Shown here: positions 3,464 to 55,650 of the stretch, piece after piece
Layout: each line of letters starts with the position of its first letter
Position numbering within the stretch: position 1 is the first letter of the stretch
Virus record (IMG/VR): IMGVR_UViG_3300034117_002447
Span: 62,001 to 126,000 of that record
DNA: 64,000 bases
Direction: 5' to 3' (one strand)
Notes under the pieces: generated by a model
The model's input: only the letters and a program-made list of their open reading frames with translations
What the model was told of the DNA's origin: nothing
Database searches by the model: none
Made by a program: the position numbers and the translations under genes

Positions 3464-4200
3464 TATTCTTCCATTGTTGGTTTTAACCAGATTTGTGTTC
3501 TAAAAATGTATTCCATAAGGAAAGGGTACTCTGATAACTTAAGTATCGTTGCATGAGTGTCATGTTTGAAACACTTAAAGAGCTCTTCCCTGATTCTCTC
3601 AGCTGATACTACACACATCTTAACTTCGTAATCGTAGTGCTTTATTACTTGAGACATTTCCTCAGGGATAGTAAATCCTTTAGTGATTGAAAATCTAATA
3701 GCTCTCAAGATTCTCAAAGGATCATCGTGAAACGTTTCCTCGCAAGGTAATGGCGTTACTAATAGCCCAAGCTTCAAGTGAGTCAGCCCATCAAAGTAGT
3801 CAATGATCGAGCCGTCCGCTTCTCTTGCCAGGGCATTAAGAGTAAAGTCTCTTCTCTGTAAATCGTCGAATAGGGTTCCAGGCTTAATGATCGGAGTTCT
3901 GGTAAACGGCACGTATCCAGTCTCTTTTCTAGACATTACAAAATCAGCAACTCCTTGGTACTTATGTCCGTCTGGAAATTTTGCTCTGATTGTGTAACAT
4001 TCTTTGGTGATCAGGAATATCTGGAATTTTTCACGAGTTAAGTAGTCAACTAGCAAGTCAAACATATCAGCCGCCTCAGGAAATTCCTCAAGCAGAGTTG
4101 CTTTCGGCACGGCTACGTAATCAACGTCTTTGGACTGAAGTCCCAAGATCTCGTCTCTTACCTTTCCGCCTACTTCGTAAAATTCAAATGGTGCTGTCAT
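3463..4200 (-). CDS. cca: tRNA nucleotidyltransferase (CCA-adding/poly(A) polymerase family)
   Basis: VGGKVRD, DVDYV, DLQRRDFTLNAL, DDPLRILRAIRF, SAERIREE. Confidence 0.9.
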   Translation of the reverse strand: MTAPFEFYEVGGKVRDEILGLQSKDVDYVAVPKATLLEEFPEAADMFDLLVDYLTREKFQIFLITKECYTIRAKFPDGHKYQGVADFVMSRKETGYVPFTRTPIIKPGTLFDDLQRRDFTLNALAREADGSIIDYFDGLTHLKLGLLVTPLPCEETFHDDPLRILRAIRFSITKGFTIPEEMSQVIKHYDYEVKMCVVSAERIREELFKCFKHDTHATILKLSEYPFLMEYIFRTQIWLKPTMEE

Positions 4201-13972: not shown

Positions 13973-14362
13973 TTAAACTGTCTCGTTTTCTCCTGCAAAA
14001 AAGTTCAGGATTGAACGGCTATTGCGTTGCTCATTTGATAAGCACTCAACTTGAATTTTCTTCTCTTGAATTTCTCTCTGTAAAGCGTCATGCTCTGATC
14101 GAAGGCCTGCTAATTCAGAATTGAACTTTGTACGCTCAATGAATTCAGCATCTCTTGCCTCTGCATTAGAGAAAGTTTTCTTTCCGTTTGCATCAACTTC
14201 AGAGTTAATTTCAACCTTGATTTTTGACTGGATATTGGAGATTAATTCGGTACTCTTGTTAGACTCAGTGTTTAGGTCTAAAATTTCCATTTGCAATTCT
14301 TGGATTGCTTGAGGCAATTCCATTAATCGTTCTACTGTGTTAGTTAAATTTGTATTTGTCAT
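13973..14362 (-). CDS. Coiled-coil hypothetical protein
   Basis: Heptad-rich; start moved to MTNTN. Confidence 0.65.
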   Translation of the reverse strand: MTNTNLTNTVERLMELPQAIQELQMEILDLNTESNKSTELISNIQSKIKVEINSEVDANGKKTFSNAEARDAEFIERTKFNSELAGLRSEHDALQREIQEKKIQVECLSNEQRNSRSILNFFAGENETV

Positions 14363-14446
14363 TTGTTTTAAATTAAGATACACTATTACTATACTATTAA
14401 AAATCGATTTAGGTTTAATCGGATGATAAAAAATCTAAAAAATTTG

Positions 14447-14520
14447 TGGACCATTCAGGGCTCGAACCTGAGACCTTCGCATTATGAGTGCGCTGCTCTA
14501 ACCAACTGAGCTAAAGGTCC
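14447..14520 (-). tRNA. tRNA-Ile2(CAT, lysidine type); Met not excluded
   Basis: GGACCTTTAGCTCAGTTGGTTAGAGC start typical of Ile2; loop CTCATAA. Confidence 0.8.
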
Positions 14521-14571
14521 TGGTGGAGGGATTATTTTTTTAGAGTAGAATTCGCCCACCTCAAAACTACT

Positions 14572-14658
14572 TGGTGCCGCAGGTAGGATTCGAACCTACT
14601 CAGCCTTACGACAACAGATTTACAGTCTGTCCTGACTCTCCAACTTCAGCGCTACGGC
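14572..14658 (-). tRNA. tRNA-Tyr(GTA)
   Basis: ACAGA-CTGTAAA-TCTGT; long variable arm; CCA. Confidence 0.9.
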
Positions 14659-14796
14659 AGGTAAGGAAATGAGAAGATGGTTCAGTGGACATCTCATTTT
14701 ACGATTAGCATTACTCTGGTGAATGCCTGCAAACTCCGATTATGTCAGTCAGCATTCACTCTCGAACTATTGACACAATCATTCCCTAATCAACCT

Positions 14797-14871
14797 TGGC
14801 TGGGTGTCCAGGATTCGAACCTGGGACCACTCGATTAACAGTCGAGAGCTCTACCGCTGAGCTAACACCCA
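14797..14871 (-). tRNA. tRNA-Asn(GTT)
   Basis: CTCGA-CTGTTAA-TCGAG; CCA. Confidence 0.95.
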
Positions 14872-14878
14872 ATAAAAT

Positions 14879-14978
14879 AAAAGAACCTCGACCACCATTT
14901 CAGCGCAAGCGCGTGCTTTCAGCTAGGCTTGAACGTTACGTCCTAGCTGGTGGAGTCAGCCTCTACTAAGGTTCTTTT
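14879..14978 (-). ncRNA. Structured inter-tRNA RNA closed by a 10-bp stem
   Basis: AAAAGAACCT/AGGTTCTTTT ends; inner CAGCTAGG/CCTAGCTG. Confidence 0.5.
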
Positions 14979-14979
14979 G

Positions 14980-15056
14980 TCGAGATGGCAGGATTCGAAC
15001 CTGCGAGTTCTCCTGCTCCCAAAGCAGGCGGGGTAACCGGACTCCCCAACATCTCG
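14980..15056 (-). tRNA. tRNA-Pro(TGG)
   Basis: CCTGC-TTTGGGA-GCAGG. Confidence 0.95.
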
Positions 15057-15345
15057 ATAATTTGCTCCATACTGAGACTTGTACGAAGACTGGATTTTAA
15101 CGGGTTTCTCTGACTGTTTCGAGAACCATATCCCTTATTGACGTCTTAGACTATACGGTCCTCCCCCAATAAGTCTTTTTCATTAGTGTCTTACCACATA
15201 AAAACCTGTCAACTCTCTACGTCGGCGCGGCAGAGTCTTGCTCACGTTTACCCGAATCGATCCCCCATTAAGGTCGAGGACTTTTTCACTACCATCGCTT
15301 TTTTAAAGAATGCGACCAATCTTACTGAGTATCTCTTGCTCATAG

Positions 15346-15418
15346 TAGTCCCTGTAGGATTCGAACCTACGACCCTCTGCATGTAAAACAGATGCTCTAC
15401 CAACTGAGCTAAAGGACT
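15346..15418 (-). tRNA. tRNA-Val(TAC)
   Basis: TCTGT-TTTACAT-GCAGA. Confidence 0.95.
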
Positions 15419-15499
15419 GTTTGATACGCTTTCGCCCCCTGTATGACGTATCACCGATGTTTGAGGTCGGCCTCGAACCATTAAGGGAGCCACCGGTCG

Positions 15500-15572
15500 A
15501 GCGGATGGCGAGAATCGAACTCGCATCTCCAGCTTGGAAGGCTGGAGTAATAAGCCATTATACGACATCCGC
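15500..15572 (-). tRNA. tRNA-Gly(TCC)
   Basis: CCAGC-CTTCCAA-GCTGG; U73. Confidence 0.95.
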
Positions 15573-15575
15573 TTA

Positions 15576-15651
15576 TGGAGCGGGAGGCCGGGTTCGAACC
15601 GGCGACCTCAACCTTGGCAAGGTTGCGCTCTACCAACTGAGCTACTCCCGC
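15576..15651 (-). tRNA. tRNA-Gly(GCC)
   Basis: CAACC-TTGCCAA-GGTTG; CCA. Confidence 0.97.
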
Positions 15652-15830
15652 AAGTGGGTGGGATCAGACGCGTTCTGCCCACCGGGACCTCGTCGTTAGA
15701 AAGTCTTGCGACTAACCAGAGCGTACCGAGACACTATCTAACTTCGACTTGAGGTAGTCACGGCCGCCTCTGATCCTCTCAAGTCTATTTCGTATCGTGG
15801 CAAAATGCGGCACGACCCTAATACGATGTG

Positions 15831-15904
15831 AGCCTCCTGACGGATTCGAACCGCCGACATCCTCATTACAAGTGAGGCGCTCTGGCCAACTGAGCTAAGG
15901 AGGC
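15831..15904 (-). tRNA. tRNA-Thr(TGT)
   Basis: CCTCA-CTTGTAA-TGAGG. Confidence 0.95.
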
Positions 15905-15909
15905 AATGT

Positions 15910-15986
15910 TGGTGGACCGTGAGAGACTCGAACTCTCGACCCCCGCAGTGCAAGTGCGGTGCTCTAGCCAACTGAGCTAACAGCCC
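15910..15986 (-). tRNA. tRNA-Ala(TGC)
   Basis: CCGCA-CTTGCAC-TGCGG; G3:U70; CCA. Confidence 0.97.
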
Positions 15987-15990
15987 ATTT

Positions 15991-16130
15991 AAGAACAACG
16001 TTGGAGTACCCGTCTCGCTCCAATCTTAACAGCTTCATCAGAGTTTTCTCTGGGCCCAGGCTGAGGGTGGTGAACTCTTGATCCGACCGTGATTGTCGAC
16101 ATCACATTGGCCGGAGAGACCGTTGTTCTT
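15991..16130 (-). ncRNA. Structured inter-tRNA RNA with possible pseudoknot
   Basis: Perfect 10-bp closing stem AAGAACAACG/CGTTGTTCTT and three inner hairpins. Confidence 0.55.
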
Positions 16131-16132
16131 AG

Positions 16133-16204
16133 TAGCCCGTACGAGAATCGAACTCGTCTCTCACCCGTGAAAGGGGCGTGTCCTAACCGATAGACTAACG
16201 GGCC
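16133..16204 (-). tRNA. tRNA-Glu(TTC)
   Basis: CGCCC-CTTTCAC-GGGTG. Confidence 0.95.
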
Positions 16205-16209
16205 AAATA

Positions 16210-16391
16210 AAAGTATACCGTGCTCCGGTTTTTACTTATGGTTTGTTCCCCATAACCTGATACTGTGCACAGTAGAGCAGGGACCTGAACAGAGTACCTT
16301 GGGTCATTTATATCTCTCCGGTTGGGTAGCTAATCCCATGGAGCCAAGGTTCCTTTCATCCGTGCAAGTCGGACTTCTGTTGATATACTTT
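16210..16391 (-). ncRNA. Multibranch structured inter-tRNA RNA
   Basis: Closing stem AAAGTATA/TATACTTT with at least six nested helices. Confidence 0.55.
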
Positions 16392-16393
16392 CG

Positions 16394-16465
16394 CGGTCCC
16401 ACCGGGAATCGAACCCGGCATACCGCCGTGACAGGGCGGCGTTATAGCCGATTAACTACAGGACC
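16394..16465 (-). tRNA. tRNA-Asp(GTC)
   Basis: CCGCC-CTGTCAC-GGCGG; G73. Confidence 0.95.
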
Positions 16466-16574
16466 ATTTCTCTCCAGTTCACTCCTACCCTGTGGGTATA
16501 CCGTGACGGGTTGTTTATCCATGCAAATCTACCTGAAGAGCGATTGGTTTGCGCTCGACGTGCATGGATCCGGG

Positions 16575-16680
16575 TGATTAGAGCCGGACTCGAACCGGAT
16601 ACCGTGCAAGACGGAGTAGACAACCTTACCTCTTTCGAGTTCGGGACTTGGGTACCATCCCGCATTACGCCCATCTAATC
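16575..16680 (-). ncRNA. tRNA-like RNA (GATTAGA acceptor) with non-canonical core
   Basis: 7-bp acceptor GATTAGA/TCTAATC, T arm CCGG-TTCGAGT-CCGG; core has other hairpins and no standard D or anticodon arm. Confidence 0.65.
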
Positions 16681-16685
16681 ATTAG

Positions 16686-16757
<72 letters not shown>

Positions 16758-16762
16758 ATATG

Positions 16763-16833
16763 TTGTCCCGCAAGGATTCGAACCTCGATCTTCTGGACCA
16801 AAACCAGACGTGCTGCCATTACACCACAGGACA
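16763..16833 (-). tRNA. tRNA-Gln(TTG)
   Basis: TCTGG-TTTTGGT-CCAGA; U1:A72. Confidence 0.95.
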
Positions 16834-16930
16834 ATTTTCAATCTCCAATAAGTCAAAGAACTCTTGTTAAACTTATATGATTACTATACCACATTAGGTT
16901 TAATTTAGTCACTTTCTTTCGAAAGATTTG

Positions 16931-17001
16931 CACGGTCGGAGAGATTCGAACTCCCATCTAGGGTTTTGGAGACCCGCATGCTACCATTGCACCACATCCG
17001 T
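16931..17001 (-). tRNA. tRNA-Trp(CCA)
   Basis: Loop CTCCAAA; G73; one acceptor mismatch. Confidence 0.9.
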
Positions 17002-17010
17002 GTATTCTTT

Positions 17011-17088
17011 TGGTTGCGGGACCCGGACTCGAACCGGGAACTTCAGCTTATGAGACTGACGAGATAACCGCTTTCTACGCATCCCGCA
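17011..17088 (-). tRNA. tRNA-Met(CAT)
   Basis: TCAGT-CTCATAA-GCTGA; CCA; irregular D arm. Confidence 0.85.
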
Positions 17089-17093
17089 ATGTT

Positions 17094-17170
17094 TGGTTGG
17101 AATAATAGGAATCGAACCTATAACCTTTCGCGTATCAGGCGAATGCTCTAACCAATTGAGCTATATTCCA
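17094..17170 (-). tRNA. tRNA-Ile(GAT)
   Basis: TTCGC-CTGATAC-GCGAA; CCA. Confidence 0.95.
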
Positions 17171-17176
17171 GTTTAG

Positions 17177-17250
17177 TGTCCCCGACAGGACTCGAACCTG
17201 TGACTCCCTCATTAAAAGTGAGGTGCTCTAACCAACTGAGCTACGAAGAC
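17177..17250 (-). tRNA. tRNA-Lys(TTT)
   Basis: CCTCA-CTTTTAA-TGAGG. Confidence 0.95.
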
Positions 17251-17290
17251 CTGTGTATTTAGACCTGTAACTCTGGGAGTCACTGGGCCT

Positions 17291-17320
17291 TTAGCGTTTA
17301 CGTTTCATATTCTTATTCAT
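17291..17320 (-). CDS. Candidate micro-ORF MNKNMKRKR inside the tRNA array
   Basis: A-rich upstream tract, ATG...TAA, immediately followed by a hairpin. Confidence 0.35.
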   Translation of the reverse strand: MNKNMKRKR

Positions 17321-17328
17321 TTTTTTGT

Positions 17329-17404
17329 TGGTGGTGAGGGGCGGGATCGAACCGCCGACACCAGGATTTTCAGTCCTGTGCTCTACCATCTGAGCTACCT
17401 CACC
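17329..17404 (-). tRNA. tRNA-Phe(GAA), first gene of the array
   Basis: CAGGA-CTGAAAA-TCCTG; CCA. Confidence 0.97.
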
Positions 17405-17409
17405 ATGCT

Positions 17410-17445
17410 AAAACAAAAAACCTCGAATTTTTTAGGTTCGAGGTT
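17410..17445 (-). terminator. Attenuator terminator upstream of the tRNA array
   Basis: AACCTCGAA-CCTAAAAAA-TTCGAGGTT followed by TTTTGTTTT, 5 nt before tRNA-Phe. Confidence 0.85.
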
Positions 17446-17493
17446 CGTTGTTGTTAGTTATGTAATTTCTTAACTTATACCACTAGAACCTCG
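17439..17493 (-). promoter_or_regulatory. Antiterminator (mutually exclusive with the terminator)
   Basis: CGAGGTTC (17493-17486, in the leader ORF) is the perfect complement of GAACCTCG (17446-17439, terminator 5' arm); inner AGTTA/TAACT helix. Confidence 0.75.
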
Positions 17494-17601
17494 CAATACC
17501 CCAAAATCTTTAATCGTCTCCATTGCAATCACATTAACTGTGCCTGCCGGATACTGATTCCAGTTTTGAGTATTTTTTGATATGTTCGTAGTTATTTGCA
17601 C
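17470..17601 (-). CDS. Leader peptide (43 aa) MQITTNISKNTQNWNQYPAGTVNVIAMETIKDFGVLRGSSGIS
   Basis: GTG start after ACAAAAAAATTAAACTC; lies between promoter motifs and the terminator; below the ORF-track cut-off. Confidence 0.75.
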   Translation of the reverse strand: MQITTNISKNTQNWNQYPAGTVNVIAMETIKDFGVLRGSSGIS

Positions 17602-55225: not shown

Positions 55226-55359
55226 TGTTCCTGTTTTTAAAAGTTATATTTTTATGATGCACAATTATTATACTTTTATGTTTTTCTATTATACCTAAAA
55301 AAGACTTGTAAAACCCGGCCTTTGCAGGGTAGGGAAACTCCGTCTACCTGTTTTTTGCG

Positions 55360-55485
55360 TAGTCAGGACAGGATTCGAACCTGTATGATAACTTATGAGC
55401 AGTCTTAACGGGTCTTTCGAGGTTACTCACGTTATCCTTACTATTAACCTTTATTCATGCGTCTAACCAATTCCGCCACCTGACT
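55360..55485 (-). ncRNA. tRNA-like RNA (AGTCAGG family, copy 3)
   Basis: Leu-type D arm GCGGAATTGGTTAGACGC; long GATAAC/GTTATC hairpin core; identical 3' 24-mer. Confidence 0.75.
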
Positions 55486-55559: not shown

Positions 55560-55650
55560 TAGTCAGGACAGGATTCGAACCTGTAAGTTTCCGATCGCAA
55601 CGATACCATATCCTATTTTTGGAGTCGAACCAACTTTAAGCCACCTGACT
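55560..55650 (-). ncRNA. tRNA-like RNA (AGTCAGG family, copy 4) with a second T-loop hairpin
   Basis: TTGG-TTCGACT-CCAA where the D arm should be; identical 3' 24-mer. Confidence 0.7.

What the first reader, a model, noticed from the sequence alone, without database searches (positions are those of the whole stretch)
14660..16574. tRNA array doubles as a cassette of structured ncRNAs between tRNAs
SEEN: the spacers are not short AT-rich linkers. Many are 100-290 nt, relatively GC-rich and paired: 14660-14796 (AAATGAGA/TCTCATTT, GTGAATGC/GCATTCAC), 14879-14978, 15060-15345, 15652-15830, 15991-16130, 16210-16391 and 16466-16574 (ATCCATGCA/TGCATGGAT). Three are closed by 8-10-bp terminal stems lying within about 1-8 nt of the flanking tRNAs. 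INFERRED: tRNA maturation would release each as a discrete RNA, co-induced with the tRNAs under the attenuator.
Basis: partly seen in the sequence, partly recalled or inferred. Interest (0 to 1): 0.72.

Follow-up and report, generated by a model that had tools for sequence, protein, structure and literature searches.

The report
Structured RNA genes between phage tRNAs
In an uncultured 270-kb freshwater phage, every long gap in a 19-gene tRNA array is a conserved, intricately folded RNA; one is the known 'freshwater-1' motif and the others match no Rfam family, and they are probably cut free by tRNA-processing enzymes for a purpose still unknown.

Summary
The window lies in a 270,136-bp IMG/VR phage record. 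Its minus-strand tRNA array (17404-14446) has eight long spacers that resolve into ten RNA modules. Each module has relatives in other uncultured, mostly freshwater viral contigs. There they sit between different tRNAs, on the tRNA strand, and never beside an opposite-strand tRNA.

Four families have deep alignments (21-49 distinct sequences). Their base pairing is kept by compensatory changes far above the shuffled and slid controls, and pseudoknots are included. G-U pairs outnumber A-C pairs 2-7 fold, so selection acts on RNA of the tRNA strand.

One module contains Rfam freshwater-1 (67.3 bits, cut-off 72). The conserved RNA is about 190 nt, not 62, and is closed by a covarying 13-bp terminal stem. 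No other module matches Rfam.

Release by tRNA processing is inferred from terminal stems that end 0-9 nt from tRNA ends. It has not been shown. Metatranscriptome contigs cover several modules, but DNA carry-over is not excluded. Control by the upstream 'attenuator' is doubtful, because a promoter-like site lies between that hairpin and all the modules.

Function is unknown. The nearest analogues are T4 species 1 and 2 RNAs and GOLLD/ROOL.

The parts
14446..17404 (-). Array of 19 tRNA genes, in transcription order Phe, Lys, Ile, Met, Trp, Gln, Met, Asp, Glu, Ala, Thr, Gly, Gly, Val, Pro, Asn, Tyr, Met. It carries the modules listed below.
   Evidence: ARAGORN and the Rfam tRNA model. Comparing ARAGORN and Rfam 3' ends suggests about 6 of the 19 genes encode CCA (inference).
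16205..16392 (-). Family A RNA, an extended freshwater-1 RNA of about 190 nt. It has a 13-bp terminal stem and at least 9 inner helices. The Rfam freshwater-1 core is 16291-16230.
   Evidence: RF02979 scores 67.3 bits (cut-off 72, E 7e-16, full length). There are 41 distinct homologues (A1). With the manual structure, 86.8% of cells are paired against 70.0% shuffled and 33-45% slid, and 392 cells are compensatory against 127 (0 of 500 shuffles). A same-strand tRNA is adjacent in 56 of 66 nhmmer hits.
15987..16131 (-). Family B RNA of about 140 nt. It has an 11-bp terminal stem and a long hairpin whose loop GUCGACA is conserved. It also has a covarying 8-11-nt self-complementary segment and an invariant GGAG...CUCC hairpin.
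   Evidence: A 25-mer scan gave 76 viral loci, of which 42 are distinct (A4). 93.8% of cells are paired against 81.9% shuffled and 32-50% slid, with 177 compensatory cells against 56. The palindrome occurs in 17 sequence versions. The motif ends 13-21 nt before a downstream tRNA (Ala, Asp, Phe, Glu, Val or Pro) in 27 of 42.
14659..14796 (-). Family C RNA of about 135 nt with an H-type pseudoknot. The hairpin around the 18-nt search pattern is conserved.
   Evidence: An 18-mer scan gave 82 viral loci. A5 holds 49 rows, one of them a false hit. 97.6% of cells are paired against 85.2% shuffled and 40-57% slid, with 217 compensatory cells against 52. Both pseudoknot helices covary. The pattern ends 16-23 nt before a downstream tRNA (Tyr, Val, Trp, Thr or Arg) in 45 of 49.
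15057..15344 (-). Family D RNA of about 270-290 nt. It has two long invariant blocks, several covarying helices and a pseudoknot, and it fills the whole gap between two tRNAs.
   Evidence: The scan gave 39 loci, 21 of them distinct and in many tRNA contexts; alignment A11. 84.2% of cells are paired against 73.2% shuffled and 38-51% slid, with 95 compensatory cells against 35.
14872..14978 (-). S2 RNA of about 100 nt with a 10-bp terminal stem. One inner hairpin loop carries the conserved AACGUU.
   Evidence: There are 8 distinct copies in 9 loci, the window included, each with a same-strand tRNA within about 90 nt on at least one side. The 20 chance matches of the 16-mer have no tRNA nearby, which serves as a control. 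In a 4-sequence alignment, 37 pairs are 97% paired, 7 of them with compensatory changes, against 32-43% when slid.
15419..15498 (-). S4 RNA of about 80 nt. It belongs to a widespread phage motif that elsewhere lies next to or inside tmRNA genes.
   Evidence: The 7-sequence alignment A8 has 17 pairs, 89% paired, 4 with compensatory changes. A 17-mer scan gave at least 120 viral loci. Copies lie 10-13 nt upstream of a tmRNA, or inside a tmRNA call.
15745..15829 (-). S5a RNA of about 85 nt: two hairpins joined by a loop-loop pseudoknot.
   Evidence: In A6 (9 sequences), 24 pairs are 95% paired and 13 have compensatory changes. The loop-loop pairing GCCNN/NNGGC occurs in 5 fully compensated versions among 18 distinct copies. 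It starts within about 2 nt of the 3' end of an upstream tRNA in 16 of 18 copies.
15652..15744 (-). S5b RNA of about 85-93 nt. It is a separate module and occurs without S5a elsewhere.
   Evidence: In A7 (11 sequences), 23 pairs are 97% paired and 4 have compensatory changes. 24 of 27 nhmmer hits have a downstream same-strand tRNA.
16576..16684 (-). S8a, a tRNA-like RNA of 105-150 nt. It has a 7-bp acceptor-like stem, a T arm with a UUCGAGU loop, a hairpin resembling a variable arm, and an insertion of variable length.
   Evidence: The acceptor-like and T stems covary among 13 sequences. It is not called by ARAGORN, with or without introns, nor by the Rfam tRNA model at E up to 10.
16466..16575 (-). 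S8b RNA of about 110 nt, with a 9-bp stem AUCCAUGCA/UGCAUGGAU.
   Evidence: Only 5 distinct copies are known, the window included, so the evidence is thin. Two compensatory changes appear in the copy 88% identical to the window's. In L073 a tRNA sits between the S8a and S8b homologues, so the two are separable.
16883..16912 (-). Promoter-like site (GTGACT, 18 nt, TATAGT with TG) in the AT-rich 96-nt gap before tRNA-Gln, upstream of all modules.
   Evidence: Consensus scan. The motif AACCTAA..TATAGTAAT occurs only twice in the 270-kb genome, here and at 14416-14385. Function was not tested.
17410..17445 (-).
   Evidence: Whether it regulates read-through is unknown.

Best explanation
The long gaps in this phage tRNA array are genes for at least ten separate structured non-coding RNAs. 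They have no visible terminators of their own and ride in the polycistronic tRNA transcript. Each folds on its own, usually closed by a terminal helix that abuts the neighbouring tRNAs. The enzymes that mature the tRNAs would then cut it out: RNase P at the 5' end of the downstream tRNA, and an RNase Z or RNase E type cut or 3' trimming at the end of the upstream tRNA. That would leave a compact RNA with both ends protected in a helix. The RNAs would then act in trans during infection. Shown here: conservation, RNA-level selection on the tRNA strand, fold complexity, and constant abutment to same-strand tRNAs. Inferred: release, stability and action in trans. For one family, self-association is a further inference. 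The biochemical function is not known.
For: (1) Every long spacer has homologues in other viral contigs that lie between different tRNAs. (2) Covariation is far above controls in four deep alignments and is present in the smaller ones. Pseudoknots are supported by compensatory changes. (3) G-U pairs outnumber A-C pairs 166 to 84, 114 to 25, 99 to 14 and 79 to 27 in the paired columns, so the folded strand is the tRNA strand. (4) Unpaired nucleotides that the search patterns did not fix are conserved well beyond what a spacer needs. Examples are the GUCGAC loop of family B in all 42 sequences and the second long block of family D in 21. (5) Over 369 loci and 3.25 Mb, a same-strand tRNA is adjacent in 94 of 97 (C), 76 of 96 (B), 56 of 66 (A), 52 of 65 (D), 32 of 35 (S5a), 24 of 27 (S5b), 9 of 9 (S2) and 9 of 10 (S8b). 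An opposite-strand tRNA is never adjacent. (6) Chance matches of the search patterns, in viral contigs and in 185,579 species genomes, have no tRNAs nearby. (7) The S4 family lies 10-13 nt upstream of phage tmRNAs, another RNase P substrate. (8) The phage encodes a CCA-adding-type nucleotidyltransferase, so it invests in tRNA maturation. (9) Lake metatranscriptome assemblies contain contigs over families A, B, C, S2 and S5a. (10) There is precedent: T4 rnaC and rnaD are annotated as small stable RNAs directly following tRNA-Arg, and GOLLD and ROOL lie near phage tRNA islands (PMC12286853).
Against: No RNA 5' or 3' ends and no abundances were measured. The metatranscriptome data are assembled contigs of low depth, some bridge tRNA-module junctions, DNA carry-over cannot be excluded, and the interior of family D had zero depth. 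Several spacers have unremarkable folding z-scores. The families were gathered with exact-match patterns, so some invariance is imposed by the search. The alignments are MAFFT plus hand-drawn structures, and no phylogeny-aware test such as R-scape was run. S8b and S2 rest on few sequences. No cultured phage carries these RNAs, so the host and all functional context are unknown.
Confidence: 0.6

Rival explanations
1. The modules are cis-acting processing or folding elements. As structured leaders and trailers they would insulate neighbouring tRNAs from misfolding, or present them to RNase P, Z or E, and would be discarded after cleavage.
For: Distances to tRNA ends are tight and near constant. 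The S4 family also precedes tmRNAs. No trans target was found: there is no consistent complementarity to 2,970 phage tRNAs.
Against: Many tRNAs in the same array lie 3-12 nt apart with no such element, so insulation is not generally needed. Long unpaired blocks and loops are invariant, and pseudoknots are maintained across roughly 20-100 contigs per family. That is far more constraint than a spacer or insulator requires. The same module serves many different tRNAs.
Confidence: 0.2
2. Some modules are self-cleaving ribozymes of undescribed classes that cut the polycistronic transcript themselves.
For: The folds are compact and pseudoknotted with invariant unpaired nucleotides, and they sit at transcript junctions in phage DNA. 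From general knowledge, known small ribozymes are common in phage-like DNA.
Against: No match to any Rfam ribozyme family appears even at E up to 10. RNase P and RNase Z already account for cuts at tRNA ends. No conserved candidate cleavage site was identified.
Confidence: 0.1
3. The spacers are decayed tRNA genes, small protein-coding genes, or DNA-level sites such as recombination or protein-binding sites.
For: S8a keeps an acceptor-like stem and a T arm. Palindromes occur in families A and B and in S2.
Against: Apart from S8a, no spacer matches the tRNA model at E up to 10. Compensatory changes with a G-U over A-C excess point to RNA pairing on one strand. ORFs there overlap tRNA genes and are spurious. 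The palindromic segment of family B changes sequence while staying self-complementary, in 17 versions, which does not fit a fixed protein site.
Confidence: 0.04

Closest known systems
freshwater-1 RNA motif (Rfam RF02979; motif set of Weinberg et al. 2017, PMC5737381)
   Same: Window 16291-16230 matches the whole 62-position model (E 7e-16). It has the same two hairpins and conserved core, and it comes from freshwater sequence. A homologous copy in L021 passes the curated cut-off at 84.7 bits.
   Different: The window copy scores 67.3 bits, below the 72-bit cut-off. The conserved RNA is about 190 nt with at least 9 further covarying helices and a 13-bp closing stem. It lies on the tRNA strand directly after a tRNA in phage arrays. 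Whether the original description noted the tRNA context could not be checked, because its supplement is not held.
Phage T4 species 1 and species 2 RNAs (rnaC, rnaD)
   Same: They are small stable RNAs of 139 and 119 nt, encoded on the tRNA strand immediately after tRNA-Arg in the T4 tRNA cluster. From general knowledge their function is unknown. rnaC ends in a T-arm-like hairpin, as S8a does.
   Different: Profile HMMs of eight families (A, B, C, D, S2, S4, S5a, S5b) detect no sequence similarity; S8a and S8b were not compared with T4. T4 has two such RNAs at the end of a cluster, whereas here ten are interleaved with tRNAs.
GOLLD and ROOL large ornate RNAs
   Same: They are phage and prophage RNAs of unknown function, often beside tRNA islands, with elaborate covarying folds, and they form homo-oligomers (PMC12286853, PMC5737381). 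Family B carries a covarying self-complementary segment and a palindromic loop that could mediate self-association.
   Different: There are no Rfam hits. The modules are 80-290 nt rather than 500-800 nt. Several unrelated families sit in one array. Oligomerisation is only an inference here.
Bacterial Y RNA-like RNAs (YrlA)
   Same: They are RNAs with a long terminal stem. From general knowledge, some occur near tRNAs in phages.
   Different: The YrlA model hits only true tRNAs, weakly (28.9 bits or less against a cut-off of 69). The phage has no Ro/TROVE or RtcB gene.
ncRNAs released by tRNA-processing enzymes in other systems (plant tRNA-snoRNA units, MALAT1 mascRNA, gammaherpesvirus tRNA-miRNA units), named from general knowledge and not tested here
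   Same: The logic is the same: an RNA with no terminator or promoter of its own has its ends defined by RNase P or RNase Z cuts at an adjoining tRNA.
   Different: Those systems are eukaryotic or eukaryotic-viral and use unrelated RNAs. Processing is not demonstrated here.

Membership tests
freshwater-1 RNA (RF02979) | Full-length, statistically significant match to the family covariance model | tested here: met
   Model positions 1-62 of 62 at window 16291-16230, E 7e-16.
freshwater-1 RNA (RF02979) | Score at or above Rfam's curated gathering cut-off of 72 bits | tested here: not met
   67.3 bits. The homologue in L021 scores 84.7, and the window copy aligns with it over about 190 nt. I therefore treat the window copy as a sub-threshold homologue, not as a curated member.
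freshwater-1 RNA (RF02979) | Two adjacent hairpins with the conserved CCCUGCUCU / GUGCAC / CAGG core | tested here: met
   The alignment to the model has no non-canonical pairs. Both hairpins covary in A1.
T4-type stable RNAs of the tRNA cluster (rnaC, rnaD) | Encoded on the tRNA strand inside a phage tRNA gene cluster | tested here: met
T4-type stable RNAs of the tRNA cluster (rnaC, rnaD) | Sequence or structural homology to rnaC or rnaD | tested here: not met
   nhmmer with eight family profiles against the T4 region found no hit at E up to 10.
T4-type stable RNAs of the tRNA cluster (rnaC, rnaD) | Accumulates as a discrete stable RNA processed from the tRNA precursor | not testable with these tools
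   Only assembled metatranscriptome contigs were available.
GOLLD / ROOL | Match to the Rfam models | tested here: not met
   No hits at the gathering cut-off or at E up to 10.
GOLLD / ROOL | Homo-oligomeric assembly | not testable with these tools
   The only indication is a covarying self-complementary segment in family B.
Y RNA-like (YrlA) | Match to RF02553 and a partner Ro (TROVE) protein gene | tested here: not met
   Best hit is 28.9 bits against a cut-off of 69, and it lies on tRNA genes. There is no TROVE domain in the genome.
tRNA (spacers as decayed or intron-bearing tRNAs) | Cloverleaf recognised by ARAGORN or the Rfam tRNA model | tested here: not met
   No call in any spacer, including ARAGORN with introns on 16440-16700. 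S8a keeps only acceptor-like and T-arm features.
Known self-cleaving ribozyme classes | Match to an Rfam ribozyme model | tested here: not met
   None at E up to 10 in 14300-17500. Catalysis itself was not testable.

The most novel reading that the evidence does not exclude
Freshwater phages exchange a toolkit of at least nine structured RNA classes that match no Rfam family, using tRNA arrays as a processing chassis. At least one class (family B) would self-assemble through a covarying palindromic segment and a palindromic loop, as a small cousin of the ROOL and GOLLD RNA-only complexes. Alternatively, some classes are new ribozymes or binders of host translation or tRNA machinery.
Probability: 0.3. 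Interest if true: 0.85.

Novelty: new variant of a known kind. Interest (0 to 1): 0.7.

Why it matters
Why phages place structured RNAs next to their tRNA genes has been open since the T4 species 1 and 2 RNAs, and the question was renewed by GOLLD and ROOL. This array offers ten compact, covariation-supported RNAs of 80-290 nt, several of them pseudoknotted. That size suits structure probing, cryo-EM, self-cleavage and oligomerisation assays, and expression with or without RNase P or RNase Z. The work also shows that the Rfam freshwater-1 model covers only a third of the conserved RNA and gives that RNA a genomic context. If the modules are released and stable, tRNA arrays serve as general expression and processing platforms for phage non-coding RNAs. 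That would change how the 'spacers' in phage tRNA arrays should be annotated.

Tried and rejected
- **Folding energy as evidence.** Z-scores are weak for half the spacers, so I relied on comparison with relatives.
- **Near relatives.** L020, L031, L040 and L056 are 100% identical across the array and carry no information.
- **Cultured phages (GenBank/INPHARED).** No match to the modules, only to tRNAs.
- **Species genomes.** The family C 18-mer gave 19 hits. 18 are chance or coding matches without tRNAs. One is a 2.7-kb tRNA-bearing contig binned with a Sphingobacteriaceae MAG, so there is no host assignment.
- **Y RNA idea.** Rejected: no YrlA match, no Ro, no RtcB.
- **T4 rnaC/rnaD homology.** Rejected for the eight families tested; S8a and S8b were not compared.
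- **Base pairing of conserved loops with phage tRNAs.** Only scattered 8-10-nt matches among 2,970 tRNAs, and none in the window.
- **S8a as an intron-bearing tRNA.** ARAGORN with introns finds nothing.
- **RNAalifold on the MAFFT alignment of family D.** It recovered only invariant helices, so helices were defined by hand and then counted.
- **The 16-mer used for S2.** It mostly returned chance hits, which served as a negative control.
- **Supplements.** Those of Weinberg 2017 and Fremin 2023 are not held. I could not check whether the tRNA context of freshwater-1 was noted, or whether some families are among the 8,495 unnamed IMG/VR candidates of PMC10690425.
- **Unused tools.** Covariance model R1 was built but not needed for the verdict.
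Full report
**What is there.** The window is bases 174116-238115 of a 270,136-bp IMG/VR virus record that CheckV rates complete. Nineteen tRNA genes lie on the minus strand between 17404 and 14446. Some neighbours are 3-12 nt apart. Eight gaps are 80-288 nt long, with GC of 0.41-0.55 in a genome region of about 0.30-0.40. Three gaps are closed by 10-11-bp terminal helices that begin 0-1 nt after one tRNA and end 3-7 nt before the next. Folding energies alone are not persuasive: four spacers have z of -2.5 or lower, and the rest lie between 0 and -0.9.

**A known motif appears.** A permissive Rfam scan of 14300-17500 returned one non-tRNA match of note. It is freshwater-1 (RF02979) at 16291-16230 on the tRNA strand, full length, 67.3 bits against a cut-off of 72, E about 1e-15. 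No other spacer matched any of the 4,227 families at E up to 10.

**Relatives.** A degenerate pattern from the freshwater-1 core found 60 viral contigs. In nearly all of them the motif lies on the tRNA strand next to or between tRNA genes of many different identities. BLAST of every window spacer against the inter-tRNA spacers of these loci showed three things. Four contigs are identical to the window. The freshwater-1 spacer is homologous over 150-180 nt, not 62. Several other spacers also have 75-90% identical relatives sitting between different tRNAs. Conserved blocks from those comparisons were used for further scans, which returned:
- 76 loci for the 16131-15987 spacer (family B);
- 82 for 14796-14659 (family C);
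- 39 for 15344-15057 (family D);
- at least 120 for 15498-15419 (S4);
- 28 for the 5' half of 15829-15652 (S5a);
- 11 for 16575-16466 (S8b).

A 16-mer for 14978-14872 (S2) gave 8 distinct true copies, the window included, each with a same-strand tRNA on at least one side. It also gave 20 chance hits, none of them near a tRNA. With the enlarged locus set, every long spacer had homologues. Two spacers resolved into two independent modules each: S5a and S5b, and S8a and S8b. In L073 a tRNA even sits between the S8a and S8b homologues.

**Covariation.**
- *Family A* (41 distinct sequences, A1). A hand-drawn structure of 59 pairs in 12 helices, including a 13-bp terminal stem, is 86.8% paired, against 70.0% in column shuffles and 33-45% when partners are slid. 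It has 392 compensatory cells against 127, and no shuffle of 500 reached the observed values.
- *Family B* (42 sequences, A4). 93.8% paired against 81.9% shuffled and 32-50% slid, with 177 compensatory cells against 56.
- *Family C* (A5). 97.6% paired against 85.2% and 40-57%, with 217 compensatory cells against 52. Two interleaved helices both covary, which makes an H-type pseudoknot.
- *Family D* (21 sequences, A11). 84.2% paired against 73.2% and 38-51%, with 95 compensatory cells against 35, again with a pseudoknot.
- *Smaller alignments.* S2 has 37 pairs, 97% paired, 7 compensated. S5a has 24 pairs, 95% paired, 13 compensated. S5b has 23 pairs, 97% paired, 4 compensated. S4 has 17 pairs, 89% paired, 4 compensated.
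- *S5a pseudoknot.* The loop-loop pairing occurs in five fully compensated versions.
- *Strand.* In the paired columns G-U outnumbers A-C 166 to 84, 114 to 25, 99 to 14 and 79 to 27. This places the selection on RNA of the tRNA strand, not on DNA or on the opposite strand.

**Context rule.** Profile HMMs of all ten modules were run over 369 loci (3.25 Mb). They hit beside a same-strand tRNA (within -25 to +40 nt) in the following numbers, and never beside an opposite-strand tRNA:

| Family | Hits beside a same-strand tRNA |
|---|---|
| C | 94 of 97 |
| B | 76 of 96 |
| A | 56 of 66 |
| D | 52 of 65 |
| S5a | 32 of 35 |
| S5b | 24 of 27 |
| S2 | 9 of 9 |
| S8b | 9 of 10 |

The conserved 3' part of family B ends 13-21 nt before the next tRNA in 27 of 42 copies, and that of family C ends 16-23 nt before it in 45 of 49. 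This holds whichever tRNA follows, and it leaves a linker of 2-9 nt after the closing helix. Family A starts 0-10 nt after a tRNA, and S5a starts within about 2 nt of one in 16 of 18 copies. Family D fills whole gaps. The S4 family is the exception. Most copies are not near tRNAs, but several lie 10-13 nt upstream of phage tmRNA genes, or inside long tmRNA calls. The window's array is the richest found, with ten modules; other arrays carry two to seven in varying combinations. The modules are therefore shuffled between arrays.

**What they are not.**
- They are not tRNAs or tRNA pseudogenes. Only S8a keeps an acceptor-like stem and a T arm.
- They are not known ribozymes, riboswitches, Y RNAs, GOLLD or ROOL.
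- The phage has no Ro or RtcB gene, but it does encode a CCA-adding-type nucleotidyltransferase at window 3763-4179.
- The eight families tested are not homologous to T4 rnaC or rnaD, the classical stable RNAs of a phage tRNA cluster. S8a and S8b were not compared with T4.
- They are absent from about 50,700 GenBank phage records.
- Family C, the only family scanned there, is essentially absent from 185,579 species genomes. Of 19 matches of its 18-mer, 18 are chance.
- Conserved loops show no consistent complementarity to phage tRNAs.

**Mechanism.** The best-supported reading is that these are independent ncRNA genes embedded in the tRNA transcript. Their ends would be made by the tRNA-processing machinery and protected by a terminal helix. 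What is shown is conservation, RNA-level selection, fold complexity and the abutment rule. Release, stability and action in trans are inferred. One structural clue to function stands out. All 42 family B sequences carry an 8-11-nt self-complementary segment. It comes in 17 sequence versions, and 36 of them have no room for a hairpin loop. Shuffled controls reach five arm pairs in 7% of trials, against 34 of 42 observed. Family B also has a conserved hairpin loop containing the palindrome GUCGAC. This suggests pairing between two molecules, as in the homo-oligomeric GOLLD, ROOL and OLE RNAs (PMC12286853), but it is only an inference.

**Expression.** Eighteen lake and freshwater DNA runs hold 74-96% of the stretch, and six metatranscriptomes hold 12-19%. 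Laid on the array, RNA-library contigs at 90% identity or more cover:
- family C plus tRNA-Asn plus S2 (352 nt, 5 differences);
- the 3' part of S5a through tRNA-Glu (five contigs with 0-6 differences);
- family A (a 256-nt contig at depth 43 from a relative with different flanks).

The interior of family D had no coverage. These are assemblies. Some bridge tRNA-module junctions, DNA carry-over was not controlled for, and no ends can be read. This is compatible with transcription but does not show accumulation.

**The 'attenuator'.** A terminator-like hairpin with a U tract (17445-17410) lies just before tRNA-Phe, downstream of a promoter-like TGGTATAAT. A second extended -10 promoter-like site (16912-16883) lies in the AT-rich gap before tRNA-Gln, upstream of all ten modules. 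Its motif AACCTAA..TATAGTAAT occurs only twice in the whole genome, here and just after the last tRNA. Control of the modules by the upstream hairpin is therefore not supported.

**Novelty and caveats.** One module is a sub-threshold homologue of a known motif whose true extent is three times the Rfam model. The other nine match nothing in Rfam 15. Some may be among the 8,495 unnamed candidates predicted from IMG/VR (PMC10690425), which could not be checked. The arrangement itself, ncRNAs in phage tRNA clusters, is known from T4 and from GOLLD and ROOL. The density and diversity here are new. Three limitations apply. The families were collected with exact patterns. The structures are hand-drawn on MAFFT alignments. 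No phylogeny-aware statistic was run.

Noticed in passing
window 55359-55485 (-) and 55560-55650 (-): Two unusually long tRNA-model hits of 126 and 91 nt (37.2 and 30.9 bits) that standard ARAGORN misses. With introns allowed, ARAGORN calls the first a tRNA-Leu (anticodon aag) with a 43-nt intron in the anticodon loop.
   Followed up: partly
window 16576-16684 (-): A tRNA-like RNA (S8a) with a covarying 7-bp acceptor-like stem, a T arm and a variable insertion of 10-40 nt. It is conserved in at least 36 loci but is not recognised as a tRNA. It resembles T4 rnaC in ending with a T arm.
   Followed up: partly
L358, L367, L273, L269, L380, L312 (upstream of the tmRNA); L368, L370, L376 and others (inside the tmRNA call): The S4 motif (window 15498-15419) is widespread in viral contigs. 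It often lies 10-13 nt upstream of phage tmRNA genes, or inside tmRNA calls of about 465 nt. It may be a leader or an inserted domain of phage tmRNAs.
   Followed up: partly
window 16880-16901 (-) and 14385-14416 (-): The motif AACCTAA, 3-20 nt, TATAGTAAT occurs only twice in the 270-kb genome. The two copies bracket the module-rich part of the array (tRNA-Gln to the last tRNA-Met). They could be a promoter pair or repeats flanking an acquired segment.
   Followed up: partly
window 17410-17445 (-) and about 17475-17490 (-): A terminator-like hairpin with a U tract lies 5-10 nt before tRNA-Phe. It is preceded by a TGGTATAAG site resembling an extended -10 and by a possible 17-codon ORF. Regulation was not tested.
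   Followed up: no
window 3763-4179 (-): A PolyA_pol / CCA-adding-type nucleotidyltransferase gene (Pfam PF01743, 56.5 bits). About two thirds of the array's tRNA genes appear to lack an encoded CCA.
   Followed up: partly
L073:2229-2306 (-); L048, L050, L053; L017, L034, L047: Related phage arrays carry tRNAs that ARAGORN reads as ochre suppressor (anticodon tta), as 'Pyl' (cta), or with 4-base anticodons (ttaa). This hints at stop-codon recoding in some relatives.
   Followed up: no
window 14521-14571 (-) and 17251-17328 (-): Two shorter gaps of 51 and 78 nt. The first ends in CCACCA just before tRNA-Met. The second has a hairpin with z of -3.2. Homologues were found only in a few related contigs, so they were not assessed.
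   Followed up: no
L015:13563-13958, L036:13556-13955, and L359:6745-6971: Phage-encoded tmRNAs and a group I intron occur in contigs that carry these RNA families.
   Followed up: no
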